Part shown: positions 9,057 to 64,000 of the stretch, one piece after another
How the letters are laid out: each line of letters starts with the position of its first letter
Numbering within the stretch: the stretch's first letter is position 1
NCBI GenBank assembly: GCA_001179505.1
Contig: CDMY01000055.1
Span: forward strand, 62,001-126,000
Source: Vitrella brassicaformis CCMP3155
Taxonomy: Eukaryota; Protista; Chromerida
Direction: 5' to 3'
Length of the DNA stretch: 64,000 nucleotides
Notes under the pieces: model-generated
Told to the model about the DNA's origin: nothing
Seen by the model: only the letters and a program-made list of their open reading frames with translations
The model's database searches: none
Made by a program: the position numbers and the translations under genes

Positions 9057-9515
9057 ATAGATAGATGGGGATGGGTGGGAATGTATTCTGCTGTGATGCC
9101 GCGCCCGCTTTTTGCTGCTCGTGACGCGATGGTGGCGTGTAGCTTGGTTTGCATGTCGCGACTTCGAATTTGTCAACAGAAAGACACACGAGTGCACTCG
9201 TCGAATGGTATGTGTCGTCGATACAGAGGCATGATACATTAAACCGACACACATCACGCCAGCAGAGGGTCGAGCTGTGAACACGAAGCAATGCAGCACA
9301 TCGTGACACCCGCCAGCCGTCAGTCACTCATTCATCACATCAGACCAACAGCCACCCGGCTAGTCAGGCAGTCGGGTATACACCGTCGACCAGCTATGTC
9401 GCCCCCTCCCAGAGAGATGCGCTATGATCGACCCCCCACTCCCCTCATCAGCGGCACTAATCCGCCCCGCTGCCCCGCCAACAGAGTGATGCGACACCTG
9501 CAGACATTGTTCCAC
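8952..9515. repeat. 564-bp segment duplicated at 28493-29056; both copies abut N gaps
   Basis: Appears identical by direct reading at an offset of 19541. Confidence 0.9.
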
Positions 9516-9815
9516 NNNNNNNNNNNNNNNNNNNNNNNNNNNNNNNNNNNNNNNNNNNNNNNNNNNNNNNNNNNNNNNNNNNNNNNNNNNNNNNNNNNNN
9601 NNNNNNNNNNNNNNNNNNNNNNNNNNNNNNNNNNNNNNNNNNNNNNNNNNNNNNNNNNNNNNNNNNNNNNNNNNNNNNNNNNNNNNNNNNNNNNNNNNNN
9701 NNNNNNNNNNNNNNNNNNNNNNNNNNNNNNNNNNNNNNNNNNNNNNNNNNNNNNNNNNNNNNNNNNNNNNNNNNNNNNNNNNNNNNNNNNNNNNNNNNNN
9801 NNNNNNNNNNNNNNN

Positions 9816-13481: not shown

Positions 13482-14189
13482 GACATCTACGTCATGACAT
13501 CTCCGTGGACAGGCCGCTAGGCGCTATCCTTACTGTCCATCTACTTGTTCGCCTTCCTCCGCTCTGGCGGGATTCAGATCGTCACCATCCGTGCGCTAGA
13601 TCATACGGCCCTGCATATCGCCAGCAGGCTGTTGCCCCAGCAGATCACGTGCTCTCAAGCCCGACAAAAGTAGCAGCAGCAGCGGCAGCCGCGACAGGGG
13701 AGGAGTAGGGGAGGATGATGAAGAAGAAACAGAAGAGGTGCGTGGTGGGCGCATGCAGACGGATGCTACACATCGTCACTCGAGGTGCTGTTTGTGTTGA
13801 CGTTTCTGCAGGAGAAACAGGCGGCCATGATGGAGATGATGGACCAGTCAGTCCAGAAGGCCATCATAGAGGCGCGCACAAGGCGCACTGCCGGCGTTGT
13901 GGAGGACCGCGCCACACAGGTTCGTCGGGGCAGAAAGAGGCGCAAGGGCGAGGAGATGCGTGTGGCACTCACACTCGAGCGCATTGGACGGCACCAGTAG
14001 GACAGCACGAGGATAATGGACAAGCAGGGGTAGAGAAACAGGCTGCCGACACCATTGCCGTGGCGATGGAGGCAGCGCAGGAGGCCATCTCGTTCGGCCA
14101 GTATGCACTCGGTCAGCCACAGATCACACGCAGACGCATGTAACCAATCATTGTGTGTCTGGTCTGTGTGTGTCGCCCCAGACGCAGAG

Positions 14190-14870
14190 AGCCGGGCCGT
14201 CAGCCTCCTCACTCACCTTCACAGGACATACGACGCGCCACCGAGGCCCTCTCTTGGCGACGACTATCGGCACGACCATTGTGGCGGCGATCTGGACGGC
14301 GGTGTGGATGATTCGGATGGCGAGGGAGTCATCAATGGCATGATGTCGCCTGTGGTGCGGCCTTTTCCCTTCGGCCGCTGGCCTGATTTCGACGAGCCTG
14401 TGTGGCGGTCGGTGTTGAGGAAATGTGTTGAGGGCGAGAGGGACATAGCAGCAGCAGGAGGGGCCGAGGAGCCTGTCACTATCTACGGCAGCGACCGGCA
14501 CGAGGGCGCCATTGCGATGGCCCGCGACGCAGCGAGACGGGCCGGGGTGAGTGACCACATCCACTTTTCCCACAACGACGTTGCCCATCTGCAGTTGCCG
14601 CACCGCGACAAGCCCGACGTGATTGTGACCAATCCGCCGTGGGACATTCGGCTGAGCAGTGACGCCAGGGCGGCGTGGGAGGCGATGAGGGCGTTTGTGT
14701 GCGAGAGGGCGGGAGGGGGCCAGGCCTGGCTGCTGTGCGGGGGCAATGCGCAAGACGAGCTGTTCGGTGCGATGCGCATGCGGGCGGCCAAGAAGCGGAG
14801 GATTGTGCAGGGGGGCGTCGAGATGAGCTTGAGGGCCTTTGACATATGGGACCTACACAGAGACAGATAG
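14190..14870 (+). CDS. C-terminal half of an RlmL/THUMP-type (UPF0020) RNA m2G methyltransferase
   Basis: FPFGRWPDFDEPVW, IYGSDRHEGAIAMARDAARRAGV and DVIVTNPPWDIRL. Motif I (DPxCGSGT) and the THUMP domain were not found upstream. Confidence 0.7.
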   Translation, partial: SRAVSLLTHLHRTYDAPPRPSLGDDYRHDHCGGDLDGGVDDSDGEGVINGMMSPVVRPFPFGRWPDFDEPVWRSVLRKCVEGERDIAAAGGAEEPVTIYGSDRHEGAIAMARDAARRAGVSDHIHFSHNDVAHLQLPHRDKPDVIVTNPPWDIRLSSDARAAWEAMRAFVCERAGGGQAWLLCGGNAQDELFGAMRMRAAKKRRIVQGGVEMSLRAFDIWDLHRDR

Positions 14871-15957
14871 AGAGACGCACAGGGGGAAAAACAGAGAAGG
14901 ACCGTAGGAGAGGGAGGGGAGGGGAGGGAACAGATGACTGAGGGAGGGAGAGGACTGTCCACGGTAAATATTGGCTGCGTCGGTAGTATTTGTCATGCCT
15001 GCCTGCACCACACGCACCCACCGCCCGCCCGCCATGTGTGACTGTCTATTATGCGTGTGTGTGTGCGTCTGGTGCACTAGTCTGGTGTTTATGGCTCGGC
15101 TAGCTGTGTGTGTGTGTGTGTGTCTGTGTGTGTGTGTCCGTCTCACTCTCGCTGTGCGTCCATGGGTTCTTGGCCGATTTGCCTGGGGCCTGTTGACATG
15201 AGTATTGAGAGTGAGACTTCACCTCACTCACTAAGTTGTGTCTTCCTGTCAACTGACACACATGGGTTCGCCATTTATCCTTTCCACTCGGTTGCACCAC
15301 TTCCGACCTCACTGCACAGACAGAGCATCATGCACGAACAGATACCCTCTGTGCCGCACACACACGTTTCACCCTCGTCGACACACATGAATGACGCCTG
15401 TGTGCGTGGGAGTGTTTTCCGCCTGCTGCTGCTCCGACTTCTCAGACCCCACACGTCAAAACGGACTTGCAATGGGAAAAAACCTCTTCGCTCCCGATCG
15501 CGGGGAAGAAATGCGAGCTTAGAAGCGCAAAAGGAGGAGAGAGAGCCCTCAGGAGATCTGCAGCAGAGAGGCTCACAAGTGCACTGCCTCATCGCACTGC
15601 ATCGAGTGCATCTATAGATGCTCGAGTTTCTGATGGTGGTTCCTCTCTGCGACGCGTTTCTTTTACTCTCATCGTCACTCGTGGCTTGCTCGCCACTCCA
15701 GCGCATCCTGCAGCCAACCAATGAGTCGGATCCCTCCCCCCCCCTCCGTCCGGGGTGGCGTGACCCAGGCGGGTGACGTAGAATTGTTGCCGCGAAACCA
15801 CGCCGCGTTTAACAAGCCTCTCCCCCGTTAACGCCCTCCCCCATTAACGCCCTGGCGCCGGCGGCCGGCGTGGCGTCCTGGGTGCAGGCTTGTGCAACCA
15901 CTGTTCACGCCCAGTCATTCTGTTTCTCTCGTCACAGTTCTCCTTAGCTTTTCCGTC

Positions 15958-16937
15958 ATGGCGGGTGGCGGCCTCGTGATGCTCTTGGGCGCCGTCGCTG
16001 TGGCCCTCCCCGGGGTTCTGGGTCAGCGCTGGGTGGCAGGAGATTTCAATAACGGCAGAGGCAACGTCGTCTGGGGTCGTGGCTTCGCCCATGGAACCTG
16101 CCGAGATGTCAGCACGGGGGCCACGACTCCCAACCCGCTGATCTACACCGCACTTGATAACGGATATATTAATGCGGGTCGAGGCTGGGGTAAGTAAGGG
16201 AGCTAGGGGCAGTCCTACAGAATCAAAGTCATGTTCTTCCATTGTCATTTCTTCCCTGCCTGGTGCCTGTCTACCCGCAGGGGTCATCGGATGTAACGAC
16301 GAGACGAAAATCCATATGGTGGCGGCCCATACCGTCGTCCGTAACCGTGTACGAGGCCTGTCGGATGCCAGATACAAGACCAACATCCAGAGCGTTAATC
16401 GCACCAGCCTCAGCCATTTCTACGACGCCTATGCTAAGTTTCCGTTGAAGAAGTTCAACGAGGCCGTTGCTGAGGACGAAGCGGAGGGCCAACCACAGTA
16501 CATCGGTACGTGGCCGACCTTTGGCTGCAGTGCACTGCTGTTCTCCCTTATTCTTGCTCAACTCTCACCCATGTCTCTTTTGCTCGCAGGCGTCGTGGCT
16601 CAGGACTTGCGCGAGTTGCTTCCCGAGGCGGTGGTCGAGACGCAGTACGAGAGCATCACTGCCGAGGGCGAAGTGATCAAGGGGGAGCCCACACTGTACG
16701 TGGACATGGACACCATCCTCTACAGTCACGTGAGTGGGCAACGGTAGAAGGTTCCTTTTCGTCGACTAGGTTGCCTTGAGAGTTGTTTCTCGGGTTCGAT
16801 TTGTTCAGATTGCGGTGACGAAGCAGCTCATTCAGAAGGTCGACAAGCTCAATGACACCAAAGAGCAGCTGCAGGAGACCCAAAGAGCGTTGAAGGTCCT
16901 GCAGGACCGCATGGACGCATTCGAGGGCGCCCATTAA
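15958..16937 (+). CDS. 241-aa secreted protein with Peptidase S74 / intramolecular chaperone auto-processing (ICA) domain; exons 15958-16189, 16281-16505, 16590-16729, 16809-16937
   Basis: Four GT-AG exons total 726 nt in frame. Signal-peptide-like N-terminus; SDARYKTNI, GVVAQDLRELLPEAV, LYVDMDTILYSHIAVTKQLIQKVDKL and a terminal coiled coil. Confidence 0.85.
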
Positions 16938-17070
16938 GGTCAAGGGTGATTGATGTGATAGTCCAGGAGGGACGCTGGCTGTCGTCAAGTTTGTGGTGCT
17001 GGAGGATAATCATTTCTCTATCGTTGCTTTTCACGTACACGCAGCGACGACGAGGGGCAGAATCACTGCA

Positions 17071-20000
17071 TCAGAAAAGGTTGGCCAATCGCCGCCGACT
17101 GCTCTGATTCTTCTTCAGTTGTTTTTCTTGTGCGACCATTTTGCTTTGTCTGATTCTGCTCTGCCTTGTCGGTGATCTGCGATTTCGCCGTTTCTCTCGC
17201 TTCGTTTCCTGAGCGATGGCTGCCATGCTATGCATCACTTCGGCTTTACACACATGAAATTCGCTTTCTTCGCAATCTTGAAACGGACTCGAGTATGCCA
17301 ACTGACGATCGAACTCATCGATGACTGACGCATGCACAATGAATTCACGCAAGGAGCATGAATGCAACGAGTCTGACAGTGTACACAATTCAGCCCATAC
17401 ATGGCCATGAAGCAGCCAAAACACACACACACGGTCCATCCATCCATCCATCATCGGCTATTTCAAGTTTGTGGGTCTGTTGCACCAACAAATATGTCAG
17501 TCATCAGGATGAACGGCACGCATACATCCATGCAATGCCTGCTATAGTCTGCTCTCCCTCCCTCCCTCCCGCCCCGGCCGCCCCGGCCGCTGTATGTGTC
17601 GTTGAATTATCTACCCGTCTCACTGTCTGTCTGTCTGTCTGCCTCATGGTACTTGGGCGGTCCGTATGTGTTGGTTGGTGCATGCCATGTGCTGTGTGGC
17701 GTAGTCAGTCAGTCGTGTCTGTCTGTTTTCCATCGGCCGGCCCACACGGCAGTGGGGCCCTTGAAACACTCCACAGCCGTCAACTACACCACACACCACA
17801 TAGGAAGAGAGAATCTGACACATTGATGTATACATGGAGGATGTGATGTGTATTCTATGTACCGTTGCTGGTGCCTTGCCGTCCTCAATCGCCTGGCAGG
17901 CATCGAGAAGGAGAAAGATGGAAACATAGATAGCCCGCCATATATATGCTCATACCTACCTGGCACATGTACGCGAAGGACTGGGCGTCCAGACGGCTGC
18001 CCGAGATCCGCTGGCCGTGCAGCGATATCAAATCCTTCCTGTGCTCACAAATGCATATACACATAAGACATCCATGTGTGTAACATGTGGAACGCATGTG
18101 TGTGTGCGTCTATGATGACTGGTTGCATTCGAGTAGGAGTGTCTGCAGCTCGCGCAGCACGGCCGCAAACGGACTGCGGAGCAACGGCGTGAAAACCACC
18201 ATGCGCTGCACAAACGATCGCGAGACACGGACCCTTGTATGGCCATGCATTCTCCATGCCCATGTCTCTGTGTACCTGTGTGGAGTTGCCATTGGTGCAC
18301 AGCAGACGATAGCCATTCTCCTGCTGGGGGCCCACAACACTGCACATGCACACATGCACCATTTGCATGTCACACACAAGAGTTCTATCTTCCCTGTCTG
18401 CCTCCTCATTCACCGATTCTCGATGGTGATGGCCGTTTTGGCCTCCGTGGCATCGGCACCGCAACGAGCATCACACTGCATGTGTGCACCACAGTAGAGC
18501 GTGTGCACACATGTCTCTCCCTCCCTGACGAGCTTCAAGCACTTACCATGACGGCTTTCTTGCCCGATGCGATGTGGGACCACTTAAGCACTCGAATGAA
18601 TGGCAGCAGATGCAACGCAGCACGCTCGTCACCTCCATACATAAACGCGACGAAAAGAAAAATATGCATGCACCTGGATGCCCTTGGTCTTTGTGCGTAC
18701 GTGGATATTCTGCGAGCGTTTCGGCGACCTCTTCATGGTCCTCCTTGGTCGCCTTGGGCAGCGGCACACGACGGGGGGCAGTCGTCTTGGGCTCCACACA
18801 CTCACGCTCAGTCACCGAACGACCCTCACGAACGGCAAAATCTGATCAAAAGGGATACACAGACACGCAAATGGGAGCATGGACGCCTCTTCGTTCCCTC
18901 TCGCACCCATGTCTTTGAGTATGATGTCTTTGATGTTCTTCTGCTGCTGTTGCTGTGCCGCCTTCTGACGCCCACCGCCGAAGAGCAGGTCCAGTGGCGA
19001 GGGAGCTGCCAGAGACTCCCCCGCATCCCCAGCCACAGCACCACCGCCCCCCTTGCCCACAGCCACATGATGCTGCTGCACCACACTCTGGTGCACAGAC
19101 GGACCGCCACCCCCACCAGCAGCAAACAGACCGCCACACGCTTGGGTCGTGGCGACCGGTTCCTCCACCATGGGGCGGGAGGGGGTGTGCGTTTGGGTGT
19201 TCTGGTAGGACGGGTATCGCTGCTCAGTGGTGTGGTCCTCTGTGTGTGCCGGGGGGATGTATGTGGGGGGATTGGTGTATGTCAGTGGGGGCTGCTGGTG
19301 CTGGTGCTGGTGGATGGGGGTGGGGGCTGGGATGGCGGGAGGAAGCAGCATGTGAGATGGCAGAGCTACGGGCTGATCAAAGACAGGGAAAGACGGACGT
19401 ATACACGCAAGCCAGGTGAGCTTCATTTGTATTTGAGTGTGACCTGGAATGTGGGTTGGTTGCTGATGTTGGTGTCGGTGATCGTCGTGGTGGCGCATTG
19501 CATCTTCTGTAGGGTGCTGATGTGTCGTTCGGCGGCGGCGAGTCGCTCGTCAATCTGAGCCAGCCACTTGCTGTGACCGCCCACCTCAGACATCTGACAT
19601 ACACCACAGAAAGAGACAAAGTGCAGGACAGAAAGAGAGCTTTTGTTGGGATGTGTTGTGTGTCGCAGGTGGTCTCACCGTCTGTGTGTGGATCTGCTGC
19701 AGTTCGTAGTGTTTGGCGCTCCACATGCCCATGTCGTGCACACACTGACTCAACACACCCTGATGCCCCTCAACCTGGACCAACACAGACACACAACATA
19801 GACCTCCACACGTGGTGCCGTGCCCTACACGCGCCGGTACCTGTCGTTTGATGGTATCGATTTGCATGGCTATGTCCTCCTGCACCCAGAACTGCATGCT
19901 GCACACGTTGCTCTGCACACGCTCCACCTCCTTCGCCAAATCCACCTGACACTGCAAAGCACGGGATAGATGAATTGGGCGCATCCATCCATCCATCCAT

Positions 20001-47920: not shown

Positions 47921-48515
47921 TCACCATGAGAAGAGTGTGTTCTGTCCCACTAGGTGGTCGAGGCGATTGATCCAGTCGATGGACACGCGGCGCGTCTGGC
48001 CGGCCGGCGCGCTCGACGCTATCGTCAGCATCGACACACCCGTGTTGTGGTGGAAAAACCTGACACACATATCAAGCAAGATGCCATCATGACATACACA
48101 CGGCACGGTCGTCCCTCTGTCTGTGTGTCGGTGTACGTACCTGATGAGGGGGTTGTCGTGTGTGCCGGTGATGGACTTGATGAGCAGGTCCAGCAGATCG
48201 GCGTGCGCCACGAGGATGACCAGATCGGCACTCCCACTCCCCGCCATGTGCCACAACCTGCCATGCCAGCCACACACAAAGACCGAACGTTGGTCCGGTG
48301 CCTCTGTCTGTGAGTATTAACATATTGTGTGTTGGCAGGCGGTGTTGTCTGTCTGTAAACTACGAACCACTCGGCGACTTTGTTGGCGCGTTTCAGTGCC
48401 TCGGCCAGCGTCTCCTTGGAATGGCCTGGTGTGGGGAAGCAAAGCAGCACCCACCGATTGACAGACAGTGAGTGACACACATATGGACTCACTGACTCCT
48501 TGCATGTCATGTATG

Positions 48516-48557
<42 letters not shown>

Positions 48558-49757
48558 ACCTCTGTACCAGCCGTCCTTCATGGCGTCGGGGAAGGTGACC
48601 TTGCCGGGGAAGTGCTTCTCGAACTCAGCCGTGGCCCATCCTGCACACACTCATCTCATCTCGCGAATGAATGAATGGCATGAACGAACATGAGGGAGGG
48701 GCCGACTGGCTGGCTGACCCTCTGAGGGCACAAATCTGCCGTTCTCCTCCTTGTACATGCCGCCAACCTGCACACACGCACCACAACCGTAATCGAAGAC
48801 CACCTTTTGGCCTGACTGAGTGCTCGTCTCATCTCGTGTGCGGCAGTCAGTCAGTCAGCTACATGCATACCTCGTACAGCTCTGGATTGCAGAAGACGCT
48901 TTTCCTCTCGAGACCGAGCGACTCGATCACGGGCATGGCCGTCAACATCGCCCGGAGCATCGGCGAAACGTACAAACGCTTTACACAGACACACACCAAG
49001 AAACAGAGGGAGCATCACATACCCTCTCTCCGTGTCCATCTGCCCCTCACCCCACCCACCCAAGACGTCGACATACCAGTCTGGGGAGGCCCGCGGCACT
49101 CTTCCGGTCACTGCCGATGGAGGTGGTGGTAGTGGGGGAGGACGCGCTGGCGCTGTCGGAATCGTCCTGCTCCTCATTCTCGCCGCTGTCGCCGTTGTTG
49201 GGGTTGGATGTGCGGGGCGGCAACAGGGAGGGCGGGATGTACGAGTCGATCATGGACGACAGACGGTCCACCTGCTTGACGCCCAACGATGATATCTCGG
49301 GGTCTGTCCACAGACAGACATATATATGCACGCAATGACATGCCATGGGCATCTTGCTGTCTGCGTTGTGTGCGTGTGTGCATGGGGCTGTGGAGCATGT
49401 GTCAGTCACTTGAGCTTCGCCTTCGCTCGAACTCTCGGTTCATATCCAGCCACTTGGAAGTGCCTGCGAGGAAATGGCCAATGCAGCCGTCGGAACAGAC
49501 ACAAACACACGCACAGAGGGCGGCGCAAGTGAAGAGTGCTCGTCGAGGTCATGACGGGCTGTCGGTCCCTCTCTTACCTGGGCTTGGGTAGCTCTGCTTC
49601 TCGCGGAGCTGCTGATAAATCTCGTTGTTCGAACTCTGTGCATGACGAATCATCAGGATCTGCACCACACACAAACACACTGGAATTCGCCTACGCGCGA
49701 ATGGTGGCCTGCATCTGTCGGAGATCTATTCTCCCGTCAGCCATCTCGTACCTTCAT
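47921..49757 (-). CDS. Histidine phosphatase / phosphoglycerate mutase-like protein (multi-exon)
   Basis: MK|ILMIRHAQSSNN catalytic motif, DPEISSLGVKQV, LYVSPMLRA, NPELYE|VGG, VILVAHADLL and HHNTGVS in correct order. Confidence 0.85.
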
Positions 49758-49918
49758 GGTTGTGACCTGCGTCGCGGCCGTCGGAGGGCCACTTCGCTCG
49801 CTCCGAAGACTACTCCATCAACTCCCCGTGAGGTTACGAAGGAGTGCGAGCTCGGGGTCGGGCCCCCTTTGCCCCCCCAGTCTCAGGCTTGTCGAAGCAT
49901 TTCTCCTCTCACCGCATC

Positions 49919-52900
49919 ATGGCAGGGAAGAAGGGCCCCGAGAAGCCCAAGGCAGACATCGCAAATCTGCAGGTACTACTGGAAGGGAAACATGCCATTC
50001 ATTTCAACGTCGCCCTGTTGCAGATATCTCAGTATGGCGGGTTTGCGGCACGAAAGGCCAAGGAGAGGGCCGAGCTGGAGCCGTCCATCGACGTGCTGCT
50101 GGAGACCTGCAAGCAGCGGCTCCTGGAGGCAAAGAAGGAATACATGGCCGTCACAAGCCAGCTGGGCAAAGGCCAGGCCGCCAACCTCGATGTCGAGCCC
50201 AAATTCGCTGCCATGCAGGTCGACAAGAGCCTGCATGGCGTCTCCCCAACCATAGAGAGATGTTTCGATGAATGGTGTTTGGTTTGTCTGCAGGCGGCAC
50301 TTCAGCAGCTGCAGAGGCAAGCCGTCGACGAGTCCGATGACCGAGCGGCCCTTTCAACCGTGGCCGCAGTAACCCGCCGCTCAGCAACGTACCGGAGCGG
50401 CGCACAGGCCGCATTTATCGCAACATTAAGGGCGCTGCTCCATGACCTCTTGCTGACCACTGACCCGTACCTCTCTCTCTCTCTGAGCATGGTCAGTTCT
50501 GTCCTGCTGCTGTCTCTTGGTCTTTTTTCTTGCAGAGCCAGTCGATTGGACCACTTGGACAAGACGTTCAGGTGGTAAGTTAAGCTGGCTGGCACGGACG
50601 TCTCATGTGTGAGCCAGGCAGACACAGGCACACACACATACACGCCCGCAGCTGATTATGCCAAGTGTTTCTGTGTGTCTGATGACAGGTTCAAGAAGGA
50701 GGCTGCCAGTTGGGGAGTAGACATGGAAGGAATCGCTGCGGTACCGACACAAGCCCGGCACACCGAGGGATGGAGAGATGGATGGCTGGGGGGATGGGTG
50801 ACGATATCCCTGGTGTGTTCAGGCGGAATCAGGTGAAGCCGAAGGCCCGACCGAAGTCGGTGCAGGCTTGAAGGAGGGCGAGGGCACAGAAGAGGACCAG
50901 CAAGCTGAAGAGGAGTCTGCCGAAGGAAGTAGCGAATCCGAGGGGCAGGAGGAGCAGCAGCTACCTGAAGAGCAAATCAAGGAGGACATCGCTGCAGCTC
51001 AGGAAGGTGAAGAGCTCGACCCGTCCCGCTTTCCCGGCAGCACCTTCTATTCCGCTGATTGGAAGCAAGAAGAGCTGCCCAGAGAAGAAGAGGAGACCCC
51101 CAAGGTTCGACCGAAGAGCCTACTGGCCCGGCTGATGCCTTCTTTGAAGCCCCTGACGCCGCCCGAGCGACTCCGCCAGGATTACCGCACCAAAGAGCTG
51201 TTTCGGAGCGACATCCAGCCTGCAGAGGGGCGCTCTCACACGCCATCCACAACAACGGGCGGCGGGATGTTCTCAGGCGTCCCATCCACAGGGCGATGGG
51301 CGCACAAAGGCATGGCTGTGTCCCGCCCTGAGACAGCCCACATTGCTCTCACCACTCCTTCCCAGCCGGCGTCTGCTCTCGGGTCCAGGCCGGTGTCTCG
51401 CCCATCTGGGATGAGGGAGAGGCAGAGGGGCGAAGACGGGACTGTCCTGACGGGCAAAGGGCCGACCGATGTCGTGCAGTCGCAGAAATGGGGTGACAAC
51501 GAGACAAGAAGTCGCCACACACACCACTTTGTCTGTTTTGTCTATTTTGCCTCCTGTGCAGATTCTTCTTGGCAGCGAGCGGCTGATATCGGGAGGGGCC
51601 CCAGGACTGCAATGGATACCGGGACCGCGAGACTGCTCTTGCCATCGGAGTTGTCAGCACTGCGTTGCCGTGGAAACGCCAGAGGCAAACATTGCGTTCT
51701 ACTGATTGCAGGTCTGTCGGCCAGCGGTGGATTGCCAAGCGGCACGCACAAGTCGACGAGGCCATGTAAGGAGGAGACACAAACATGCCATGGATGCGGA
51801 ATGCCACCGGCTCCCTGGTCCTTCCTCAGTCGCCGAGAGGAGTTCTCTGCCTTCATGAGCGACTATGCGTCGAGGCAAAGGCGTCTAGAAGAAGCCATCA
51901 ATCGGTCACACCTCGCAGACATGAGACACGTCCCCCAAACGCCCATTCTCTGTCTGTCTGTCTGTCCGTTCGCCCGCCCGCCTGTCTGCCTCTTTAGGCG
52001 CATCGAAGCCAAGCGGTACGGGGCCACCCTGCAGCAGCGGGCCTACATGATGCCCCCTGACGCCCATCTAGACGTCCATGAAGACATGGCAGCGCAACAG
52101 CGATACCTTCAGTTGAGGAAGGACGAGGACGAGCGCCAAGGCCGGCAGCAGCGGAGCCAGGAGGACCAGCCCGGCGAGTCGAGTCTGCTCTCGCGGACAG
52201 CCTCGAGGCTGCCGAGCGCGGCTGTCAGTCGAAGGAACACCGTGATGCCTCAGGCCGAAGAAGCAGATGAGACGGCGAATGAGTGTGAGCTTGCTGAAAG
52301 AGCGAGACAAACAGACACGGGCGCTGTCTCGCCTTCCAAGTCTCATTCATTGTTGCTGCTGCTGGTTGGTTGCCTGCGTGGGTCCGTGACAGTCGATGAG
52401 ATGCTGCTGTCTCGCCCTCCACTGTTGAACCTTGTCGGGTCGACTCAGGTACGCTACCTACACCTGTCGCTGTCTGCAAACACATGTGCAAGCATGCTTT
52501 GAAAGGGACGTTGTGTGTGTGTGTCTTTTCAGCTGGCAGCTCCCACTGAAGTGGATTTGTCGCCGTCGGCAGCCCAGTCGCCAGAGGCCGCAGACGCGAC
52601 TGCCATCGATGAGTCAGTCAGCATTCTTTGCGTCAATCGAGTGGCAGACAAACAGTCCACATTAATGAATCACGCCGGGATGCATGTGTGTGTTTTGCTT
52701 TGCAGGGCTTCGCGGCCGGGAGTCTCCATCAAGCCCGGGGAAGACGTGCAGCAGCACGAGTTGATGCTCAAGAGGCACCTGTACCAGCACCTCATGGTGA
52801 GTCAGACACATCAAGCAAGCAATCATCTCTCTGTTTCTGTGCGCATGAATGCACCAGGCGATCCCCGGCTACGAGCAGGATGGTTCTCCGCTGTCCCCCC

Positions 52901-53427
52901 CCTCACTCACGTCACCATCTCTGGCACCATACCCACCCAGGCAGCACATCGACAAACGGCACGACCCCTGTGCTGTCCTCGCCGCGCCCTGCACACTGTG
53001 GAGTGCCAAGCACCACCTGACGAAGAAGGAGGACCAGGGGAGTGGAGGTGGCTTGTCGCTTGATGCCATCAGGAGGAGGCAGTTGTGGGAGGTGGAGACG
53101 GCCAAGCAGATGATGGCCAAGATGGGCACGATGGTCGACAGTGCCGTCATTGACAAGGGGCTCGTCATGCCACTGCACCAGCTCAAACGAGGGTACGCAG
53201 GGAGGGAGGGAGGGAGGGAGGGACACACTGCTCGACCACTCAGCCCAACAGCATCACTGTTTGTGTCTGTCTCTGTGTGTGTCTGTCTGTGTGCCCACCC
53301 GCCCACAGTGTGGCTCCTCACACGACTGTGCCCCGTCTGTTGATCAACCCGCTTTACGAGACCAAGGAAGGAGAAGGCCGGCAAGGGCAAAAAGAAAAAG
53401 GCCGGAGGCAAGAAAAAGAAAAAGTGA
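49919..53427 (+). CDS. Large multi-exon coiled-coil/low-complexity protein, unknown (possibly ciliary)
   Basis: Coding-like exons from MAGKKGPEKPKADIANLQ to RRQLWEVETAKQ..VIDKGLVMP..RLLINP and a Lys-rich tail. May be split into two genes. Confidence 0.45.
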
Positions 53428-54899
53428 TCAATGACCGTACCGACCGACCGGACTGTGCGTTTGAGTGAGTGAATGAAGAGCCGAGAAGCTCAGCACGGAC
53501 AGACAGACAGCCAGCCAGACAGACAGACAGACGGACGGACAGACGGGCGTATGATCGGTTCAATTTGGTGTGGCCATTGTGATGAATCCGGGCCATTGCG
53601 TTGGTCTTAGCTGAGTGACGCCACTACGGTGTTAAAGCGTCGGCAATGGAAACGTCCGTCCACAGTCGGTGATCGAATTGGTTGGCAGGAACAGACAGAC
53701 AGACAGACATGCAATGCCGTCACTCACGCACGTGTACTAAAACAGCGACGCAAAATTCCGCACCCAGCCAGCTATGCGCTCATGCGACTAGACAGACAGA
53801 CAGACAGAAGGCCATCCGAGCCAGGGAGCGTTAGTCGTACGGACACACACACACACAGACACATGGAGGGCTGGATTCACGTCCCGTTTTGCCAGTGCAG
53901 TGCAGCAGAAGAGAATGAGGTCACGCAGCTAATATCGACACGGATGGATGGATGGATGGATGAGTGGATGTGTGTGAGTGAGTGAGGAAAGGTCAGGCAA
54001 GGCAAGGAGAGAAAAATGCGGCGAAAGCAATGCAGCAACGAGCGAGCAACGCTCCGGGCGGTTTCCCGCGCCGCCCAGAGGCACTGACGCGTGAATGACA
54101 CTGCCTGTATCCAAGACCCTGTTCTCAACCACACGCCACACCACGCCACATAACACAAGACAAGACAAGACAGAGAGAGATCAGAGGCGCAAACAGTCTA
54201 CCCACCCACGAGAAACAACACCTTCTTCCCCTCTCCCCCCCCGCCAGACAAACCAGCCAGGGGGGGCGACACTCTCTGTATGAGTGTGTGCATGAAGGAC
54301 AGAGGCATCCGTCCGTGGCAAAATTCATCCCCTCTGCAGTGCACATGACCGGTGCGAAACGGAAAGACAAAAACAATACTCAGGCACTGTTGTACTGTGG
54401 GTATGGACTGACAGCACACGTCACGTGCACACCAAGGGAAGGAAGGCAGGGCGCAAAACAAGCGGACACGCCGACTCACAGACAGACACAAGTCCCTGCC
54501 GACTGACTGACTGACTGTCAAGGCGTCTGTCGGGCTACTGAGGCAGACGACGGCAAAACGGGCGGTGACGACAGCGCCGCATTTGCGGATGGATGGATGG
54601 ATGTCTATGGATGTCTATGTATGTCTGTGTGTGTACGAACAAACAAACCCACCCATGTGTGTGTGCCTCACAGTCTGTCTCTTTGCTGCATAGGCATGGA
54701 TCCACACGCATAGCACACGGACAGGCACACGCAACCCAATCAAGCTCCAGATAAACGCCCGGCCATGCGTATCCATCCACTCACTCACACGTAGGTCCAT
54801 CGATATATAAACATTCCTCTCCTTCCCTCTACAGTCTCTCTCTCGCCCCCTCCCTCCCTCTCTCCCTCTCTCTGCCTCCCTCTCCCCCGGGCCTTTGGC

Positions 54900-57036
54900 C
54901 TAGAAGGGTCGTCTCAGCTTCCTCAAAAACGCCGCAACGCCCTCGGCGTGGGTCGTGGACGCATACAGATCCTCACCAACCAGCGCCCGGCACCGCGCCG
55001 TCACCTTGTGCAGGTTGCGCCGGGGCATATAGGGCACCAGATGATGCTCGATATGATAGTTGAAGTGCCCCACCCAGCACGACACCACGGCGTCCCACGA
55101 CCCCATCACCACACGCCGCAACACAGACGGAAAGGAGGCCTTGTCGTCACCAGCAGCAGCAGTAGTGAAGCCGTGCAAGCCGTGGTCCATGGCGGCGCGG
55201 TTGTGGTTCTCTGTGACCCCGGCCTGGAGGGCCACAAAGCCGTGGAGCCGCTGGTCGACGGCCGACGTCTGGTGGACCGTCCCGAGGTACTGGTCGACAG
55301 TGATCGCGTCGAACAGGAAATGGTTGAGCGATGCGCACAGGGCCAGCGAGGCAAAGCCGAACTCGCCGACCAGCATGATCCATGACGCGTAATGCCACGA
55401 CGCGCCGAACAGCAGGGTGGGGAGGAAGGGAGCCGCCATGCGCGCCATGATCCCGCCGAACACCAAGGCGTCCCGTCGCTTTGCGGCTTCGACGACCGAC
55501 CTGGCAACCTCTAGAGGCATGTAGATCCACAGAATGACGAAGAACCACATGAAGCTGGCCCATGTGGCGTAGCCGGTGGAGAGCTTGTCGAGGGATGCTT
55601 CGAGCAGCTGAGCGGGGTGCCAGTAGACGAGGGGAGTGGTGTCGAGGGACTTGTCGCGGCCGACGACGTGGGGAAAGGCGTGGTGGGCGTCGTGCACAAT
55701 GGCGCCCTCTGACCAGTCGATGCCGCCCCACACCACGGCAAACCACTTGCAGAAGCTGCACACGGCCCGGCCCCCACACACACACAGCCCCCATGTGAAT
55801 GGGCATCCATAAGGTCGCCTGTCCCTCAGCCACATACCGCTTTCCCTGTGCTTTGGTTTCGAATGCCGACTGATGGCCGACGTCGTGGCAGAGGTACTGC
55901 CCGAGCAATGCGCCAAAAGCCCCGCACCCGATGCTCGCCACATAGAGCAGCCATCCCCACCAGCTGGCAGGGATTCGGCCCTGGATGCACCAGTGGGCTG
56001 TCAGGAGCGAGATGAGGAACAGCACAGGGCCCTGCATGTCCCACAACCAGTGCCTCAACGGGTACGCGAACAGCCCCTCGGCGGCGAACTCCTCGATGAG
56101 TTTGTGCAGGGCCTTGTCGCGGCTGCACATGAGGTCGGACGTGTCTTCGCCACTACTGGCGTCTGGCTGAGTGAGGTAGCCCATCCAGCTGACGCGCAGC
56201 CGCCGCCACACCTGATCGGACTTGATGTGTGCTGTGTAGAACGAGAGGGAAGCATCGATGCCTGAAGGAATCAAGGACACAAAACAAACCAACCATGTGG
56301 AATGCGTTTCCCTCCTCCATGGCGCATCCGTCTGTCCTCACCAACGAAATCAGCCAGGAAGTTCCCTCCAGGGTGTTTGCCGGGCGCCGTGAGTCCGCTG
56401 ATGTCATAGACGCTGCCGTTGATGATGGTCCACTGCCGGCCCTCCTTGACTGCCTGCCGAAATGCGGCCGGCGTGACGTACTTGGGAGTCTTGGCCTTGA
56501 GGCGCATCTCGTGCTCGTGGCGCACGTTGAGGCGGTCACCGTTGCCGTGACGCCACCACCTCATCAGGTGGTCTGCCCACGCACAAGCTGCAAGCAGAGC
56601 AGAGCAGAGCAGAGCAGAGCAGACAGGCAAGCAGTCTTGTCCACTGACGTGGCCCTGCCCAGTGACTCTCTCTCTCTGCAAGCGTGTTCACACCAGTGAG
56701 TTGGTAGAGCACACAGCCTCCCAACAAGACTCCCACCAACGTGACGGCGCCTGCATGACAACACCACCAACACGCAACACGTGAGTGCAGCGAAGCAAGC
56801 CGTGAAAGAGTGATGTATGTCCTCTGTCTGAGTGACTGTCTGGTCTGCTCACATCGTGTCCACAGTGTTGGCTCGGAGACCAGGGTCAGCCCGACAAGCC
56901 CAACACCGAAGAGGAGGGCATTGACGAGCAGGGCGTTGCCAGCGAGCCAAGGCGGCCCCGATACCCGCTTGGCTTGCATCAGCACCTGCTGGACGACCTC
57001 CCTCCGAGATAGTGAGAAGAGGTCAAGGAAGCCCAT
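54900..57036 (-). CDS. Cytochrome b5-fused fatty acid/sphingolipid desaturase
   Basis: VYDI..KHPGG b5 motif; His boxes HDVGH, HDAHH and HIEHH; several transmembrane segments. Confidence 0.9.
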
Positions 57037-57448
57037 CGAGGCACTGGCGGCGCGGGACGGCGGACGATGGTAAAGTGGGTGCTGCCCAGCCGCAGATCAG
57101 CCACCCTGAGCCCTCCAGCTGACCACCTCAGATTAGCTCCACCGCACGCAGACACACGGACAAATCCTCGGCAGCAGAGAGACGGCCCTTCTGTGGCTGT
57201 CTTTGTGTGACCTTGCTGTGTGACCTTGCCGTGGAGCCCTCTCTTCCTCAGAAGCTAAGCTCGCAGATTCTCGAGCGCGCACCCACCGGGTTCTCCGCCC
57301 TCCCCTGTCCCTTTGTCCCTCCGCCTTTTTCACCCTTGGTTTGATTGGAATCGACAGACCGCCCCTGTCCCTCCAAGCCGACTGACTGACGGGTGAGGTG
57401 TTTGTGCTGGCCTTGGCCTTCTTTCCTCTCCTCGCCTTGGCTTGGCTG

Positions 57449-59222
57449 ATGGAGGACCTTCGTGCGAAGGACCAGTTATGGGCGCAGAGTCCCGCTGGCG
57501 ACATGGTGCGGGATGTGATCCGGACGCTGCAGGAGAGCGACCCCGAGGTGCCCTCATCCATCCAGTCGCTGCAGCCGGAGCTCAAACGGGTCGACAGCGA
57601 CCCATCCATGCCCACCGGGGTGGCTAACGGCATCACAGGCGACCCAGAACAGAGGCAATCGTCCTCACAGATTGCTCAGGTGGGATGGATGGAGAGTACC
57701 TAGGGGGGAGGGGTGAGCGCACGATGGATCTGTGTCTGTGTGTGTGTGTGTGTGTATTGTGTGGATGCAGCCAGGAGGTTTTCGGCGTCAGTATTTGGTG
57801 CATCGCAGGAGGGGCGGCTTCGGCAGACACAGAAGCTACCCACCGTGAGCAGCACACTCGAACATACAGCTAGCTGGCCACGGACGAGCAGCAGCAGACT
57901 GTCCCTTGTATATGTATGTGTGTCCACCTCCCTCTCTCTGTGTCAGTTTGGTTGAGAAGATCACTGATCCCTTTTTATACACCCGTTTCCAGCTCATGGC
58001 CGATGACGAGGCCGACAGCGATGAGGCCGACGAGGAGTCCCTCTCACCAGAGTCGGACCGGGGCAGGAGGCGACGCTCTGCTCGCGGCCGGGGCGTGCGG
58101 CCGCTCCAGCCGCTGCCCCCCGAGCTGGAAGGCTACGTGGAGCTGGCCGAGTCGGCCGAGGCCGAGAAGGGCAAGCGGGCCAACACGCGGCAGACGGTCA
58201 TCACGATCCTCAAGTCGTTCGTCTGCTCGGCCTTCCTCTTTTTACCGAGGGGCTTCTACAACGGCGGCCTGCTCTTCTCCCTCCTCACCATGGCGTGCTC
58301 GTGGATCTTCTCTGTGCACTGCATGATTCGGCTCATCAAGTGCGCGAGGCCGGGCCGCGAGAGCTACGGGGACATTGGCGAAGCCGCCCTGGGCGTCGTG
58401 GGCCGCGTGTTTGTGGAGATCTCCGTGGTGGTCTCGCAGATGGGCTTCAGCACTGTGCTCATCATCCTGTTCTGCACCACGGTGCAGGACTTCCTCAACA
58501 CCATCGGCCGCTGCGACCCCTCCTACTATGTGGGGCTGGGGATGCTGGTGGCGCTGCAGTTCCCCCTGCAGGCCCCAATGGCGTGGGTGCGGCGCATCAA
58601 GTACTTCGGGCCCGCCATGCTGGCTGCCGACTTTTTCCTGGTCTTTGGGATGCTCATTATTTTTGGGTTTGTCATTGGCCGTCTGTCTGCGTTTGGGGTG
58701 CGGCCGGTGCACCTCATCAACACCAAGTCGTGGCCGCTCTTCGTGGGGACGGCCGTGTACATGTGGGAAGGTGCGGTGCGCGAACCAGCCAGCCAGCCAG
58801 TGGCAGGCAGACACAAGAAGCCAGGGGGGCATGCCATTCGCTGTGTGTCCTGTGTCATGTGTGTGCAGGTGTTGGGCTGATTTTGCCCATTCGTTCGTCC
58901 ATGAAGGAGCACCTGAAGCCCAAGTTCCCTATGGTGTGCACACCTGCAGAGATGTGACACCTACTCAATCAACGGACCGGACCCCTGCTCGCTCCCCCTG
59001 TGTTTGTCTGTCATGGGTTGTCAGATCTTGTTTTTCAGTTTGTTGGGCGTGCTGGTGGTCTATTCGCTTTTCTGCAGCTTCTCGTACCTGGCCTATGGCT
59101 CCGACATCCGTGACGTCATCACTGTCAACCTACCTAACACACCCGCCGTATATGCCGTCCAGGTACGCTACACGCCAACCACAGGCGCACTCATACACAG
59201 TTCCCTGTGTGTGTGGTCCTGA

Positions 59223-59272
<50 letters not shown>

Positions 59273-59813
59273 ATGATGGCCCTGGCAGTGTTCCTGACGA
59301 CGCCGCTTCAGCTGTTCCCCGCGGCCAAGATCGTCGAGCACTGGCTATTCGGCATCGGGGGGCGCGTGACGCTGCTCAGGAAATGGAAGAAGAACCTCGT
59401 GCGCACTGTCATGGTACGCACGCATGATCAGATCACAAACCACACCACTCCACAAGCAGACCGACACACATATGATATGTGGCTGTGCGCTGCGCCTGTC
59501 TGTTGCTCTCTTCTCTCAGATCGCGATTTGCCTGGCTGTGGGTTACTACGGGCGCCCTGAACTGGACAACTTCGTGGCGCTGGTGGGTGCGGTGTGCTGC
59601 GTGCCGCTGATCTTCATCTACCCCTGCCTGTTCCACCTGATCCTGGAGCGGCAGACGGTGTCGCTGGTGGGCAGCGCCACAGACCTCTTCATGGTCATCC
59701 TGGGGTTCGTCATGATGGGATTCACCGCATGGCAGGCCATCGCGACATGGCACCCCACTGGCAACTTCTCGAGGTGCTCAGAGATGTTCGACGTCCCACA
59801 CGCGACGTCCTGA
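57449..59813 (+). CDS. AAAP/Aa_trans amino acid transporter, Avt3/Avt4-like (multi-exon)
   Basis: PGGFRRQYL N-terminal motif, TILKSFVCSAFLFLPRGFYNGG, SYGDIGEAALG, FVGTAVYMWEG, LDNFVALVGAVCCVPLIFIYP. Confidence 0.9.
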
Positions 59814-60798
59814 CACCCACCTCTTTTGTGTGTGAGAGTGGGCTCATTTGTTGGGTAGAAGTGAGGATGGGGAAGAGGCTGGAGGGGGGAACTCAGGTGG
59901 TGGGTGGGTGGGTTTGGTTGGTGCTGGGCTGTCCGACAGGATGAGATAAAGTGGGTGGGTGAGGGCGATACGTCTAGCGCTATGTGGCTCGGCGAGAAGA
60001 CATGTCATATGTGTGTATCGTATTGTATAACATGGCGTTACATGGGAAGCATGCTCGGTGGACCGACAGATACGTATGTACTGTAAGTGCACTGCGCGTG
60101 CATGCATGCGTCTATGTATGTATGTCTGTATGTCTACATAAGGCTCCCTGTCCAGGTGCGGTGCTTTGAATGGACCGCCTCTCTCCACCTGTCTCTCTCT
60201 CTCTCTCTCTCTCTGGCTGGCTGCCTGTGGTGGCCTGTGTGCGTCGCTATTGGTACTGTCTTGTTCTCTGCGCGCGTGTGTGTGCTCCAACACCGGGGAC
60301 GCCCCTTTTTCTCTGTGTAATGAAGTTTCTGAGGACAGGACAGGATGGGTCTCACTCACTGGGTCTGCCGTGTCGTGAGTGCTTTACGTGCTTTTTCTCA
60401 CACACTTGTCGAAAGAGGTTGAGGGAGGGAGAAAGGGTGGTTTTTCCAGACATGTGTCGCCTGCCTTGCCTGCGTGTCCGTACGGACGGACGGACGTACG
60501 TCACGTCAGTGTCAATCCAAACGCAAACAGACTGACAGATCCAGCTGCGATAGCGGAGCTTTTTAGCTTGCACACTCGAGTCGAGATCGACTGACCCCAT
60601 TACCCAGCGAATCGTATTGCCGCTGTTGAGATGCAGCACATCTGTGCAGCAGCGGCTTCGCAGTGCCGACTCGTCGGCAGTACTCATCGTCAGCGCATAT
60701 CATCCCCACCCGTCAGCCCCAATTCCCCCCAACTCGACCCGTTCGCGCCATCAGCGCCTCATCGAGGGCCGGCGCACCCCTCCTTACCTATCAGCATC

Positions 60799-63700: not shown

Positions 63701-64000
63701 GCCAAACAAGCCAAGGAGGCGCAGTATGAAATATCGAAGGTGAGCAGGGACATAGAGAGGGAATTCCTCTCCATCATACACACATGTCTGGATGCGTGTG
63801 TGCATGTGTGTTGTGTGTGTGTTTGGGTGCTGCTGGTTTGTTCAGGCCATCGCCATGCTGGAGGAGATGCAGAAGCGCCCAAGTGCCACCCATGTCGCCA
63901 GCGTGGGCGACCAGGTGTGGGATCTGATACCCCTCGACGAAATCAAACGGTAGGTGGGGAGCGGAGCCCACACAGAGACACAGAGACGGGGCACGAGATG
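60799..64000 (+). CDS. HAD-like hydrolase with long repetitive N-terminus (3' end beyond window)
   Basis: KVIFFDLDDTLIPS (motif I), ILVTNG (motif II), VISAR and SVGD (motif IV), preceded by tandemly duplicated exons. Confidence 0.7.
61220..62489 (+). repeat. ~520-bp tandem exon-intron module, about 2.5 copies
   Basis: Exons 61220-61447, 61733-61975 and 62253-62489 are homologous; 61525-61662 and 62051-62182 are homologous; introns share gagacacagccatacgcagc. Confidence 0.8.

What the first reader, a model, noticed from the sequence alone, without database searches (positions are those of the whole stretch)
15958..16937. Small secreted protein carrying a phage-tailspike-type self-cleaving chaperone (S74/ICA) domain
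Seen: four clean exons encode a 241-aa protein with a ~22-aa signal-like peptide, an ~82-aa Gly/Asn/Trp-rich passenger, then S105-D-A-R-Y-K110, GVVAQDLRELLPEAV and a C-terminal coiled coil. Established: phage endosialidase/tail-fibre chaperones and metazoan MYRF use a Ser/Lys(i+5) dyad in this motif to trimerise the upstream region and cleave themselves off. Inference: an intron-bearing protist gene producing a tiny secreted homotrimer (adhesin, wall or toxin-like) by autoproteolysis. This architecture differs from the MYRF transcription factors and suggests a domesticated viral module.
Basis: partly seen in the sequence, partly recalled or inferred. Interest (0 to 1): 0.8.

Follow-up and report, generated by a model that had tools for sequence, protein, structure and literature searches.

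The report
Secreted self-cleaving fibre-cap protein, Vitrella
A real, spliced and expressed gene of the alga Vitrella brassicaformis encodes a small, probably secreted protein ending in the self-cutting, three-chain "chaperone" domain known from phage tail fibres and the animal factor MYRF. It is one of about 33 related loci in this genome, and its function is untested.

Summary
Four GT..AG exons at 15958-16937 give a 241-aa protein identical to a database entry from Vitrella brassicaformis. Contigs from three public runs have all three introns removed exactly.

The C-terminal 137 residues are a genuine Peptidase_S74/ICA domain:
- Pfam scores 36.7 bits against a cut-off of 22.
- The MYRF ICA crystal structure matches by sequence and by fold.
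- Ser105, Asp106, Lys110 and Gly153 are conserved, and a Leu heptad zipper follows.
- A three-copy model scores ipSAE 0.88, best control 0.00.

The N-terminus looks like a signal peptide, as it does in 7 of 9 paralogue models. The 82-aa head carries a family-conserved pair of cysteines.

The gene is not unique. A family profile hits about 33 loci in this genome, with shared exon boundaries. In 1.84 billion representative proteins the only other hits were MYRFs and virus-like fibres.

The viral-domestication idea is unresolved. Vitrella sequences form their own group outside the MYRF clade. The genome's own Polinton-like element carries an S74 fibre gene, but it is not a close relative.

Secretion, cleavage and function are untested. 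Databases already label the domain automatically, and this scan had already noted paralogues of this gene on other DNA of the same genome.

The parts
15568..15957 (+). 5' UTR, at least 390 nt; holds short upstream ORFs
   Evidence: The intron-free contig L008 maps collinearly from 15568. The X7 contig is collinear from before 15800. Upstream ORFs lie at 15618-15776 and 15721-15831.
15958..16189 (+). Exon 1: Met1 to the first base of the Gly78 codon. It encodes the signal-like peptide (residues 1-22, 15958-16023) and the start of the Gly/Asn/Trp-rich head, including Cys48.
   Evidence: Kyte-Doolittle 12-residue maximum is 2.89 at residue 6, and V-L-G sits at -3..-1 before Gln23.
16190..16280 (+). 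Intron 1 (91 nt, GTAAGT..CCGCAG)
   Evidence: Skipped exactly in contigs of X1, X2 and X7.
16281..16505 (+). Exon 2. It encodes the G-V-I-G-C-N pre-cleavage strand (Gly78-Asn83, with Cys82), the predicted cleavage point Leu104|Ser105 (Ser codon 16361-16363), Asp106, Lys110 (16376-16378), and the first half of the S74 domain.
16506..16589 (+). Intron 2 (84 nt, in frame, no stop, GTACGT..TCGCAG). It splits the Gly153 codon. The same profile position is an exon boundary in at least 5 paralogues.
   Evidence: Profile breaks at position 124/125 on C436, C185, C332 and C429, and an in-frame insert at the same place in L006.
16590..16729 (+). Exon 3: the second half of the S74/ICA domain, GVVAQDLRELLPEAV through ...LYVDMDTILYSH
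   Evidence: the Pfam domain covers residues 105-167; the fold matches ICA structures.
16730..16808 (+). Intron 3 (79 nt, GTGAGT..GTTCAG)
16809..16937 (+). Exon 4: C-terminal helix with a Leu heptad zipper (Leu206, 213, 220, 227, Met234), then stop TAA
   Evidence: AF2 models a helix at 192-240 with pLDDT 79-96. Trimer contacts fall every 3-4 residues from 199 to 241.
16938..17328 (+). 3' UTR, at least 391 nt
   Evidence: L008 maps through to 17328.

Best explanation
This is a nuclear gene of Vitrella brassicaformis for a 241-aa precursor.

Proposed mechanism (inferred):
1. The N-terminal signal peptide (about residues 1-22) takes the precursor into the ER and secretory pathway.
2. The C-terminal ICA/Peptidase_S74 domain (105 to about 198) and its leucine-zipper helix (199-241) bring three chains together. 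They template folding of the segment just upstream (about 79-104, starting at the family motif G-x-[IVM]-G-C).
3. The Ser105/Lys110 dyad cuts the chain between Leu104 and Ser105.
4. The products would be a basic trimer of the 82-residue Gly/Asn/Trp-rich head (8.9 kDa per chain), which holds the family's two conserved cysteines and is probably disulfide-bonded. A separate acidic chaperone trimer (15.6 kDa per chain) would also be released.

Shown here: the gene model and its splicing. It is also shown that the domain belongs to the S74 family by sequence and by fold, with the catalytic and structural residues conserved. The trimer is a model prediction with controls. The gene belongs to a family of about 33 loci.

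Inferred only: ER targeting, actual cleavage, the disulfide, and the role. My best guess for the role is an extracellular or cell-surface trimeric fibre-tip-like module, structural or binding. This fits the paralogue P0009, which puts a long Pro/Thr/Gly-rich mucin-like stretch in front of the same head.
For: Gene and expression:
- The model equals P0001.
- Exact GT..AG joins appear in three runs.
- An intron-free contig covers the gene.
- The identical protein is also listed from the MMETSP transcriptome source.

S74/ICA domain:
- Pfam gives 36.7 bits, E 5e-9.
- PHROGs tail-fibre C-termini match down to E 3e-11.
- The MYRF ICA structure 7dc3 matches by sequence over residues 80-235 (E 2.6e-6).
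- It also matches by fold (E 1e-6, TM-score by the target 0.63), followed by phage ICA structures 3gw6, 3gud and 4uw8.
- 289 viral models match at E<=1e-3; the 50 listed that carry a name are fibre, tailspike, endosialidase or other S74-domain proteins.

Key residues:
- Ser105, Asp106 and Lys110 are nearly invariant and Gly153 is invariant across Vitrella, MYRF and fibre sequences.
- These match the residues named essential in human MYRF: S578, D579, K583, G626 and the leucine zipper. That protein is cut N-terminal to the Ser (PMC3742443).

Trimer: three copies of residues 23-241 score ipSAE 0.88, best of 3 controls 0.00. Runs agree in at least 74% of contacts and the partner's pLDDT is at least 68. 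The mark was reached by 21 of 30 proteins solved as pairs of one chain and 0 of 23 solved as single chains. The interface covers 79-116, 125-170 and 187-241.

Secretory route:
- A hydrophobic N-terminus occurs in 7 of 9 paralogue models.
- P0015, the transcript-derived close relative of P0008, shows a leader that P0008's model lacks.
- There is no other hydrophobic segment (Kyte-Doolittle 19-residue maximum 0.61).
- Exactly two cysteines follow the leader in every dyad-bearing paralogue, both in the head.

Host gene rather than viral gene:
- Exon GC is 58.8%, against 58.1% for the window.
- The upstream ORF has an NPPW motif typical of methyltransferases.
- About 33 loci share exon boundaries near profile positions 45, 125 and 169.
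Against: - No experiment shows cleavage, trimerisation or secretion.
- No signal-peptide predictor was available; the call rests on hydropathy and the -3/-1 rule.
- The leader has no basic n-region. In an alga with a complex plastid, a signal peptide can also be the first half of a plastid leader.
- The trimer pass may come from the model's memory of solved ICA trimers (warning).
- Head residues 23-78 are not in the confident interface, and AF2 gives the whole head pLDDT below 50. The head's fold is therefore unknown.
- Two paralogues have lost the dyad (P0008/P0015 and the C592 locus), so cleavage is not obligatory in the family.
- Lys217 sits where human MYRF has Ile687, a residue named as conserved and essential there (my mapping from the alignment and the text).
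Confidence: 0.6

Rival explanations
1. The ICA domain serves only as a trimerising, coiled-coil-capped module and does not cut. The protein would work as an uncleaved 219-residue trimer.
For: Two family members have lost Ser/Lys yet are kept, and one of them is transcribed (P0015 comes from MMETSP, and the C592 locus). Lys217 stands where MYRF has Ile687 in the zipper that MYRF processing needs.
Against: Ser105, Asp106, Lys110 and Gly153 are all intact here and in most paralogues. That pattern is hard to explain without selection for catalysis.
Confidence: 0.15
2. The protein is not secreted. The N-terminal hydrophobic stretch would be a signal anchor or the first part of a bipartite plastid leader, so the trimer acts on an internal membrane or in the plastid.
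For: The leader has no basic n-region (MAGGG...). Vitrella has a complex plastid reached through the ER (general knowledge). No predictor was run.
Against: The h-region is only about 16 residues and is followed by a V-L-G|Q site. The conserved cysteine pair and the mucin-like paralogue P0009 fit an extracellular fate. No transit-peptide-like Ser/Thr-rich basic stretch follows the leader.
Confidence: 0.15
3. It is a viral fibre gene lying in an integrated virus, not a host gene.
For: S74 is typical of phage, giant-virus and polinton-like-virus fibres (PMC12220804). This genome holds a Polinton-like element with such a fibre gene.
Against: The gene has three spliceosomal introns that are removed in transcripts. 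Its GC is host-like, against 29-38% in the viral island. The window has no low-GC island. Paralogues share exon boundaries. Similarity to the resident viral fibre is weak (hhalign 43.8 over 64 columns, against 67.3 over 119 for MYRF). IMG/VR holds no relative.
Confidence: 0.04
4. It is a truncated or degenerate MYRF-type membrane-bound transcription factor.
For: The best non-Vitrella sequence and structure hits are MYRF ICA domains.
Against: Residues 1-104 hit no Pfam family, so there is no NDT80 domain. No NDT80 match was found in the genome, although that search's control did not ring either. No transmembrane segment follows the ICA domain. The MYRF clade (support 100/99) excludes all Vitrella sequences.
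Confidence: 0.02

Closest known systems
Intramolecular chaperone (ICA, Peptidase_S74, PF13884) of phage endosialidases, tailspikes and tail fibres (K1F endoNF 3gw6, GA-1 neck appendage 3gud, T5 L-shaped fibre 4uw8)
   Same: It is a C-terminal domain with the same fold. It has the Ser/Lys(i+5) dyad, the G-[VIL]-x-A-Q-[ED] motif and a terminal helix bundle. A trimer is predicted. Short S74 proteins of 150-250 aa with small heads also occur in phages and bacteria.
   Different: It is a cellular eukaryotic gene with three introns and a signal-peptide-like leader, in no virion context. The head has a conserved cysteine pair. The pre-cleavage motif is G-x-I-G-C-[GN] rather than the G-[IV]-[GN]-T type seen in the MYRF and fibre rows. 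Sequence identity to phage domains is only 27-35%.
MYRF / MrfA membrane-bound transcription factors (ICA structure 7dc3)
   Same: These are the best sequence and structure matches outside Vitrella. The match runs through the pre-cleavage strand, the ICA domain and the zipper. They are eukaryotic and are cut N-terminal to the Ser.
   Different: The Vitrella protein has no NDT80 DNA-binding domain, no MYRF_ICA-specific (PF13887) or MYRF C-terminal domain, and no transmembrane segment. It has a signal peptide instead of a type-II topology. It is 241 aa, against about 600-1300 aa. It falls outside the MYRF clade.
S74-capped fibre proteins of polinton-like viruses and giant viruses, including the Polinton-like element on contig C484 of this same genome
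   Same: They carry the same terminal domain and sit in protist genomes (PMC12220804).
   Different: Those are large, repeat-rich, intron-less viral ORFs in low-GC islands beside protein-primed DNA polymerase B, integrase and A32 ATPase genes. The resident one is only distantly similar to this family.

Membership tests
Peptidase_S74 / ICA domain (PF13884) | Profile match above the curated cut-off | tested here: met
   36.7 bits against a cut-off of 22, residues 105-167; 29.2 bits on the genomic read-through by reference.
Peptidase_S74 / ICA domain (PF13884) | Ser nucleophile, following Asp, and Lys five residues on | tested here: met
   Ser105, Asp106 and Lys110 align with the MYRF and fibre residues and are at least 90% conserved in A1. 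They correspond to S578, D579 and K583 of human MYRF.
Peptidase_S74 / ICA domain (PF13884) | Conserved Gly of the G-[VIL]-x-A-Q-[ED] motif, and a C-terminal leucine-zipper helix needed for processing | tested here: met
   Gly153 is invariant. A helix spans 192-240 with Leu206, 213, 220, 227 and Met234. One zipper position differs: Lys217 stands where MYRF has Ile687.
Peptidase_S74 / ICA domain (PF13884) | ICA fold | tested here: met
   Foldseek finds 7dc3 at E 1e-6, then 3gw6, 3gud and 4uw8. 289 viral S74 models match at E<=1e-3.
Peptidase_S74 / ICA domain (PF13884) | Homotrimer | tested here: met
   This is a prediction only. ipSAE is 0.88, best of 3 controls 0.00. The mark was reached by 21 of 30 proteins solved as pairs of one chain and 0 of 23 solved as single chains. 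The pass may come from memory of solved ICA trimers.
Peptidase_S74 / ICA domain (PF13884) | Autoproteolytic release of the upstream region | not testable with these tools
   Needs expression of wild type against S105A and K110A.
Peptidase_S74 / ICA domain (PF13884) | Upstream region folded as a triple beta-helix or other trimeric beta structure | tested here: inconclusive
   Residues 79-104 lie in the confident trimer interface. The monomer model has pLDDT below 50 for residues 1-104.
MYRF family | NDT80-type DNA-binding domain N-terminal to the ICA domain | tested here: not met
   Residues 1-104 hit no Pfam family. MYRFs carry PF05224 and PF13887. PF05224 was not found in the genome, but that search's control did not ring.
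MYRF family | Transmembrane segment after the ICA domain | tested here: not met
   The protein ends at the zipper. The Kyte-Doolittle 19-residue maximum after residue 30 is 0.61.
Viral or phage fibre gene | Lies in a viral genome or integrated element | tested here: not met
   GC is host-like, introns are present, the window has no low-GC island, and an upstream ORF carries an NPPW motif typical of methyltransferases.
Eukaryotic secretory protein | Cleavable N-terminal signal peptide | tested here: inconclusive
   Only hydropathy and the -3/-1 rule were applied, plus 7 of 9 paralogue models with a similar leader. No SignalP-type tool was available.

The most novel reading that the evidence does not exclude
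The roughly 33-locus family is a separate eukaryotic use of the viral fibre 'cap'. A constant self-removing chaperone would mass-produce a diversified set of small, disulfide-stapled trimeric heads that are exported. That would be a receptor-binding-protein-like repertoire, used by a coral-associated alga to bind microbes, viruses or its own wall. It would be a third cellular role for the ICA domain, beside virion fibres and MYRF.
Probability: 0.12. Interest if true: 0.8.

Novelty: new variant of a known kind. Interest (0 to 1): 0.5.

Why it matters
The ICA/S74 domain is known from virus and phage fibres, from related bacterial tail-fibre-like proteins, and, in cells, from the MYRF transcription factors. 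Here it caps small, apparently secreted proteins in a free-living relative of the apicomplexan parasites, and it has expanded to about 33 loci with shared introns.

If cleavage and export are confirmed, this would be a new cellular use of a self-removing trimerisation chaperone. It would also be a compact natural scaffold of about 137 aa for making small trimeric proteins. More generally, it gives a test case for how viral fibre modules and MYRF-type ICA domains are related.

Tried and rejected
Searches that gave little:
- The word-index protein search with the genomic read-through found only the protein itself. With the family alignment it found only Vitrella-type entries, and was capped at 8000 candidates.
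- The exhaustive phmmer search gave only 11 hits at E<=1e-3: Vitrella paralogues, two MYRF-type proteins and two fibre-like proteins. No Chromera, apicomplexan or dinoflagellate relative appeared.
With P0001 it found nothing in IMG/VR.
- tblastn against phage records gave 7 weak tail-fibre hits.
- The search for NDT80 in the genome was empty, but its control did not ring, so absence is not shown.

Structure of the head:
- The AF2 monomer gave no usable model of the head.
- Atlas look-alikes of the head were only leads, with scores of 0.90 or below and TM below 0.4.

Origin:
- The phylogeny of 24 sequences over 169 columns could not settle the origin. Vitrella forms one group (support 86/82).
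- A Vitrella+MYRF grouping is not in the best tree but is not rejected (p-AU 0.129). Several branches are long.
- P0008 and P0016 were left out of the tree: P0008 is a close relative of P0015 and P0016 is a fragment of P0017.

Other points:
- A shared charge pattern of the fragments was rejected. The head is basic here and in P0003 but acidic in four paralogues.
- Head divergence is only modestly higher than that of the ICA domain (21% against 31% mean identity).
- Literature searches found no paper on cellular non-MYRF S74 proteins.

Exons were searched by reference, and the full-length protein was used only as database id P0001.

Full report

Reading the sequence gives four exons with canonical GT..AG introns. 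They are 15958-16189, 16281-16505, 16590-16729 and 16809-16937, which is 726 nt or 241 codons plus TAA.

Exon 2 alone gives a weak S74 hit. Exon 2 + intron 2 + exon 3 can be read straight through, because intron 2 is 84 nt, in frame and has no stop. That read-through scores 29.2 bits on Peptidase_S74 against a cut-off of 22.

The same read-through retrieved one database protein, P0001. It is 241 aa, from Vitrella brassicaformis CCMP3155, named 'unnamed protein product' by NCBI and 'Peptidase S74 domain-containing protein' by UniRef. Its sequence equals the hand model residue for residue. From then on I used the full-length protein only through that id.

The genome handle agrees with this organism: 72.7 Mb in 1064 contigs, with the window at C55:62001-126000.

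**2. Is it expressed and spliced as claimed?**

- Contigs of three runs from two studies (X1 and X2; X7) skip exactly 16190-16280, 16506-16589 and 16730-16808. A DNA-like run (X3) is collinear.
- A 1507-nt Logan contig (L008) carries the uninterrupted 726-nt ORF and maps to 15568-17328 with only those three gaps. This gives UTRs of about 390 nt on each side.
- The run kinds are guesses by the tool, so 'RNA' is inferred from the intron-less form. The family-profile search of the genome, which matched this gene's exons on C55, showed no second copy of it.
- The reading frame is closed upstream of ATG 15958 in the collinear transcript.

**3. What is the C-terminal part?**

On P0001, Pfam S74 scores 36.7 bits over residues 105-167. 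PHROGs tail-fibre C-termini match down to E 3e-11.

The solved MYRF ICA domain 7dc3 aligns over residues 80-235 at E 2.6e-6, and a phage tailspike matches weakly.

An AF2 model is confident for residues 110-240 (block pLDDT 63-96). It finds 7dc3 (E 1e-6, TM-score by the target 0.63) and then the phage ICA structures 3gw6, 3gud and 4uw8. It also finds 289 viral models at E<=1e-3; the 50 listed that carry a name are fibre, tailspike, endosialidase or other S74-domain proteins.

In an alignment with paralogues, MYRFs and fibre proteins, Ser105, Asp106 and Lys110 are nearly invariant and Gly153 is invariant. These are the counterparts of S578, D579, K583 and G626 of human MYRF. That paper reports those residues and the leucine zipper as essential, and its N-terminal fragment is residues 1-577, so the cut falls just before the Ser (PMC3742443).

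The helix from about 199 to 241 has Leu or Met every seven residues. One difference is that Lys217 stands where MYRF has Ile687.

**4. Trimer prediction.**

Three copies of residues 23-241 give ipSAE 0.88, with the best of 3 controls at 0.00. The three runs agree in at least 74% of contacts, and the partner's pLDDT is at least 68.

In the tool's calibration the mark was reached by 21 of 30 proteins solved as pairs of one chain and 0 of 23 solved as single chains. The tool warns that a pass may come from memory of solved relatives.

The confident interface covers 79-116, 125-170 and 187-241. It therefore includes the pre-cleavage strand, but not head residues 23-78.

**5. The N-terminal part.**

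Residues 6-21 form a hydrophobic core followed by V-L-G|Q. Seven of nine paralogue models have a similar leader. P0015, the transcript-derived close relative of P0008, shows a leader that P0008's model lacks. No other hydrophobic segment exists in the protein.

The head, residues 23-104, has no Pfam family. It is rich in Gly, Asn and Trp (24 of 82 residues). It holds the only two cysteines of the mature protein, Cys48 and Cys82.

Every dyad-bearing paralogue likewise has exactly two cysteines after the leader, 26-36 residues apart and both in the head. The second always lies in the motif G-x-[IVM]-G-C-[GN], 22 or 23 residues before the Ser.

The head's fold could not be modelled.

**6. A family, not a single gene.**

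The exhaustive search of 1.84 billion representatives returned only 11 hits at E<=1e-3. Besides a 53-aa fragment of this gene itself, six were Vitrella family members (five named paralogues and a fragment clustered with a sixth), followed by a sturgeon MYRF, a MYRF-type protein from a metagenome, and two fibre-like proteins.

A profile of the family hits 58 exon-sized pieces in the Vitrella genome. These group into about 33 loci:
- 15 cover the pre-cleavage region.
- 8 also show similarity in the N-terminal head.
- Neighbouring or inverted pairs lie on C277, C520, C204 and C429.

Piece boundaries recur near profile positions 45, 125 and 169, which are the places of this gene's three introns. 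The introns therefore most likely predate the expansion. This is an inference, checked by eye at the Gly153 position in L002-L004, L006 and L007.

Two members have lost the dyad: P0008/P0015 and the C592 locus.

Paralogue P0009 places about 230 residues rich in Pro, Thr and Gly in front of the same head.

**7. Origin.**

The same genome holds a low-GC island on contig C484, running from about 48,000 to at least 64,000 (29-38% GC against about 51% beside it). It carries a protein-primed DNA polymerase B, an rve integrase, an A32-type ATPase and a repeat-rich fibre ORF ending in a canonical S74 domain (52.8 bits). This is a Polinton/Maverick-like element. Such elements are reported to carry S74 fibres widely (PMC12220804).

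However, the family profile matches that fibre less well (hhalign 43.8 over 64 columns) than it matches a MYRF ICA domain (67.3 over 119 columns).

A maximum-likelihood tree of 24 sequences over 169 columns shows:
- All Vitrella sequences fall in one group (support 86/82).
- MYRFs form a starred clade (100/99) that excludes them.
- The viral and phage sequences are not one group.
- Holding Vitrella and MYRF together costs 2.7 log-likelihood units (p-AU 0.129), so that grouping is neither shown nor rejected. Several branches are long.

A recent capture from the resident element is unlikely.

**8. Context.**

The window has even GC (52-66%) with no viral island. The upstream ORF at 14055-14870 has an NPPW motif typical of methyltransferases. 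Exon GC is 58.8%, against 58.1% for the window.

**9. What is known already.**

Databases label the domain automatically. Full-text searches found S74 discussed only for phages, contractile injection systems, giant and polinton-like viruses, and MYRF.

Small S74 proteins with short heads are common in phages and bacteria. The short-head architecture is therefore not new in itself. What is new is its setting: a cellular, intron-bearing gene with a leader peptide, expanded into a family in a eukaryote.

This scan had already noted paralogues on other pieces of the same genome, and follow-up agents reached similar readings. I count those as agreement, not as evidence.

**10. Verdict.**

It is a new variant of a known kind and of moderate interest.

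Noticed in passing
G000:C484:~48000-64000 (L001, L009:4000-10000, L010): A low-GC island (29-38% against about 51% beside it) holds ORFs hitting protein-primed DNA polymerase B (PF03175, E 1e-24), rve integrase (E 9e-8) and Pox_A32 ATPase (E 9e-10). It also has a repeat-rich fibre-like ORF ending in a canonical S74 domain (52.8 bits). This looks like an integrated Polinton/Maverick-like virus. Its ends and capsid genes were not sought.
   Followed up: partly
G000 contigs C277:112501-115354, C520:119728-120666 and 159567-162117, C204:113670-116712, C429:9258-12398: Neighbouring or inverted pairs of family members. In all, about 33 loci match the family profile, and many match only in the C-terminal half, so other head types may exist.
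   Followed up: partly
P0008/P0015 and L006 (G000:C592:35595-36326): Paralogues in which the Ser/Lys dyad is replaced (RSSLSQ/RSSLAQ; GESTLAEEIK) while the rest of the domain is kept. One of them is found in a transcriptome source.
   Followed up: partly
window 14055-14870 (+): A long ORF with a VIVTNPPW motif typical of N6-adenine or RNA methyltransferases. It is likely part of the upstream host gene.
   Followed up: no
window 15618-15776 and 15721-15831 (+): Two short upstream ORFs beginning with ATG lie inside the 390-nt 5' UTR of the transcript.
   Followed up: no
window 16096: Run X7's contig reads C instead of A, which changes Thr47 to Pro in the head. It may be a strain difference or an assembly error.
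   Followed up: no
window ~9500-9800: Assembly gap: the window holds 600 N in all, and ORFs crossing this stretch are artefacts.
   Followed up: no
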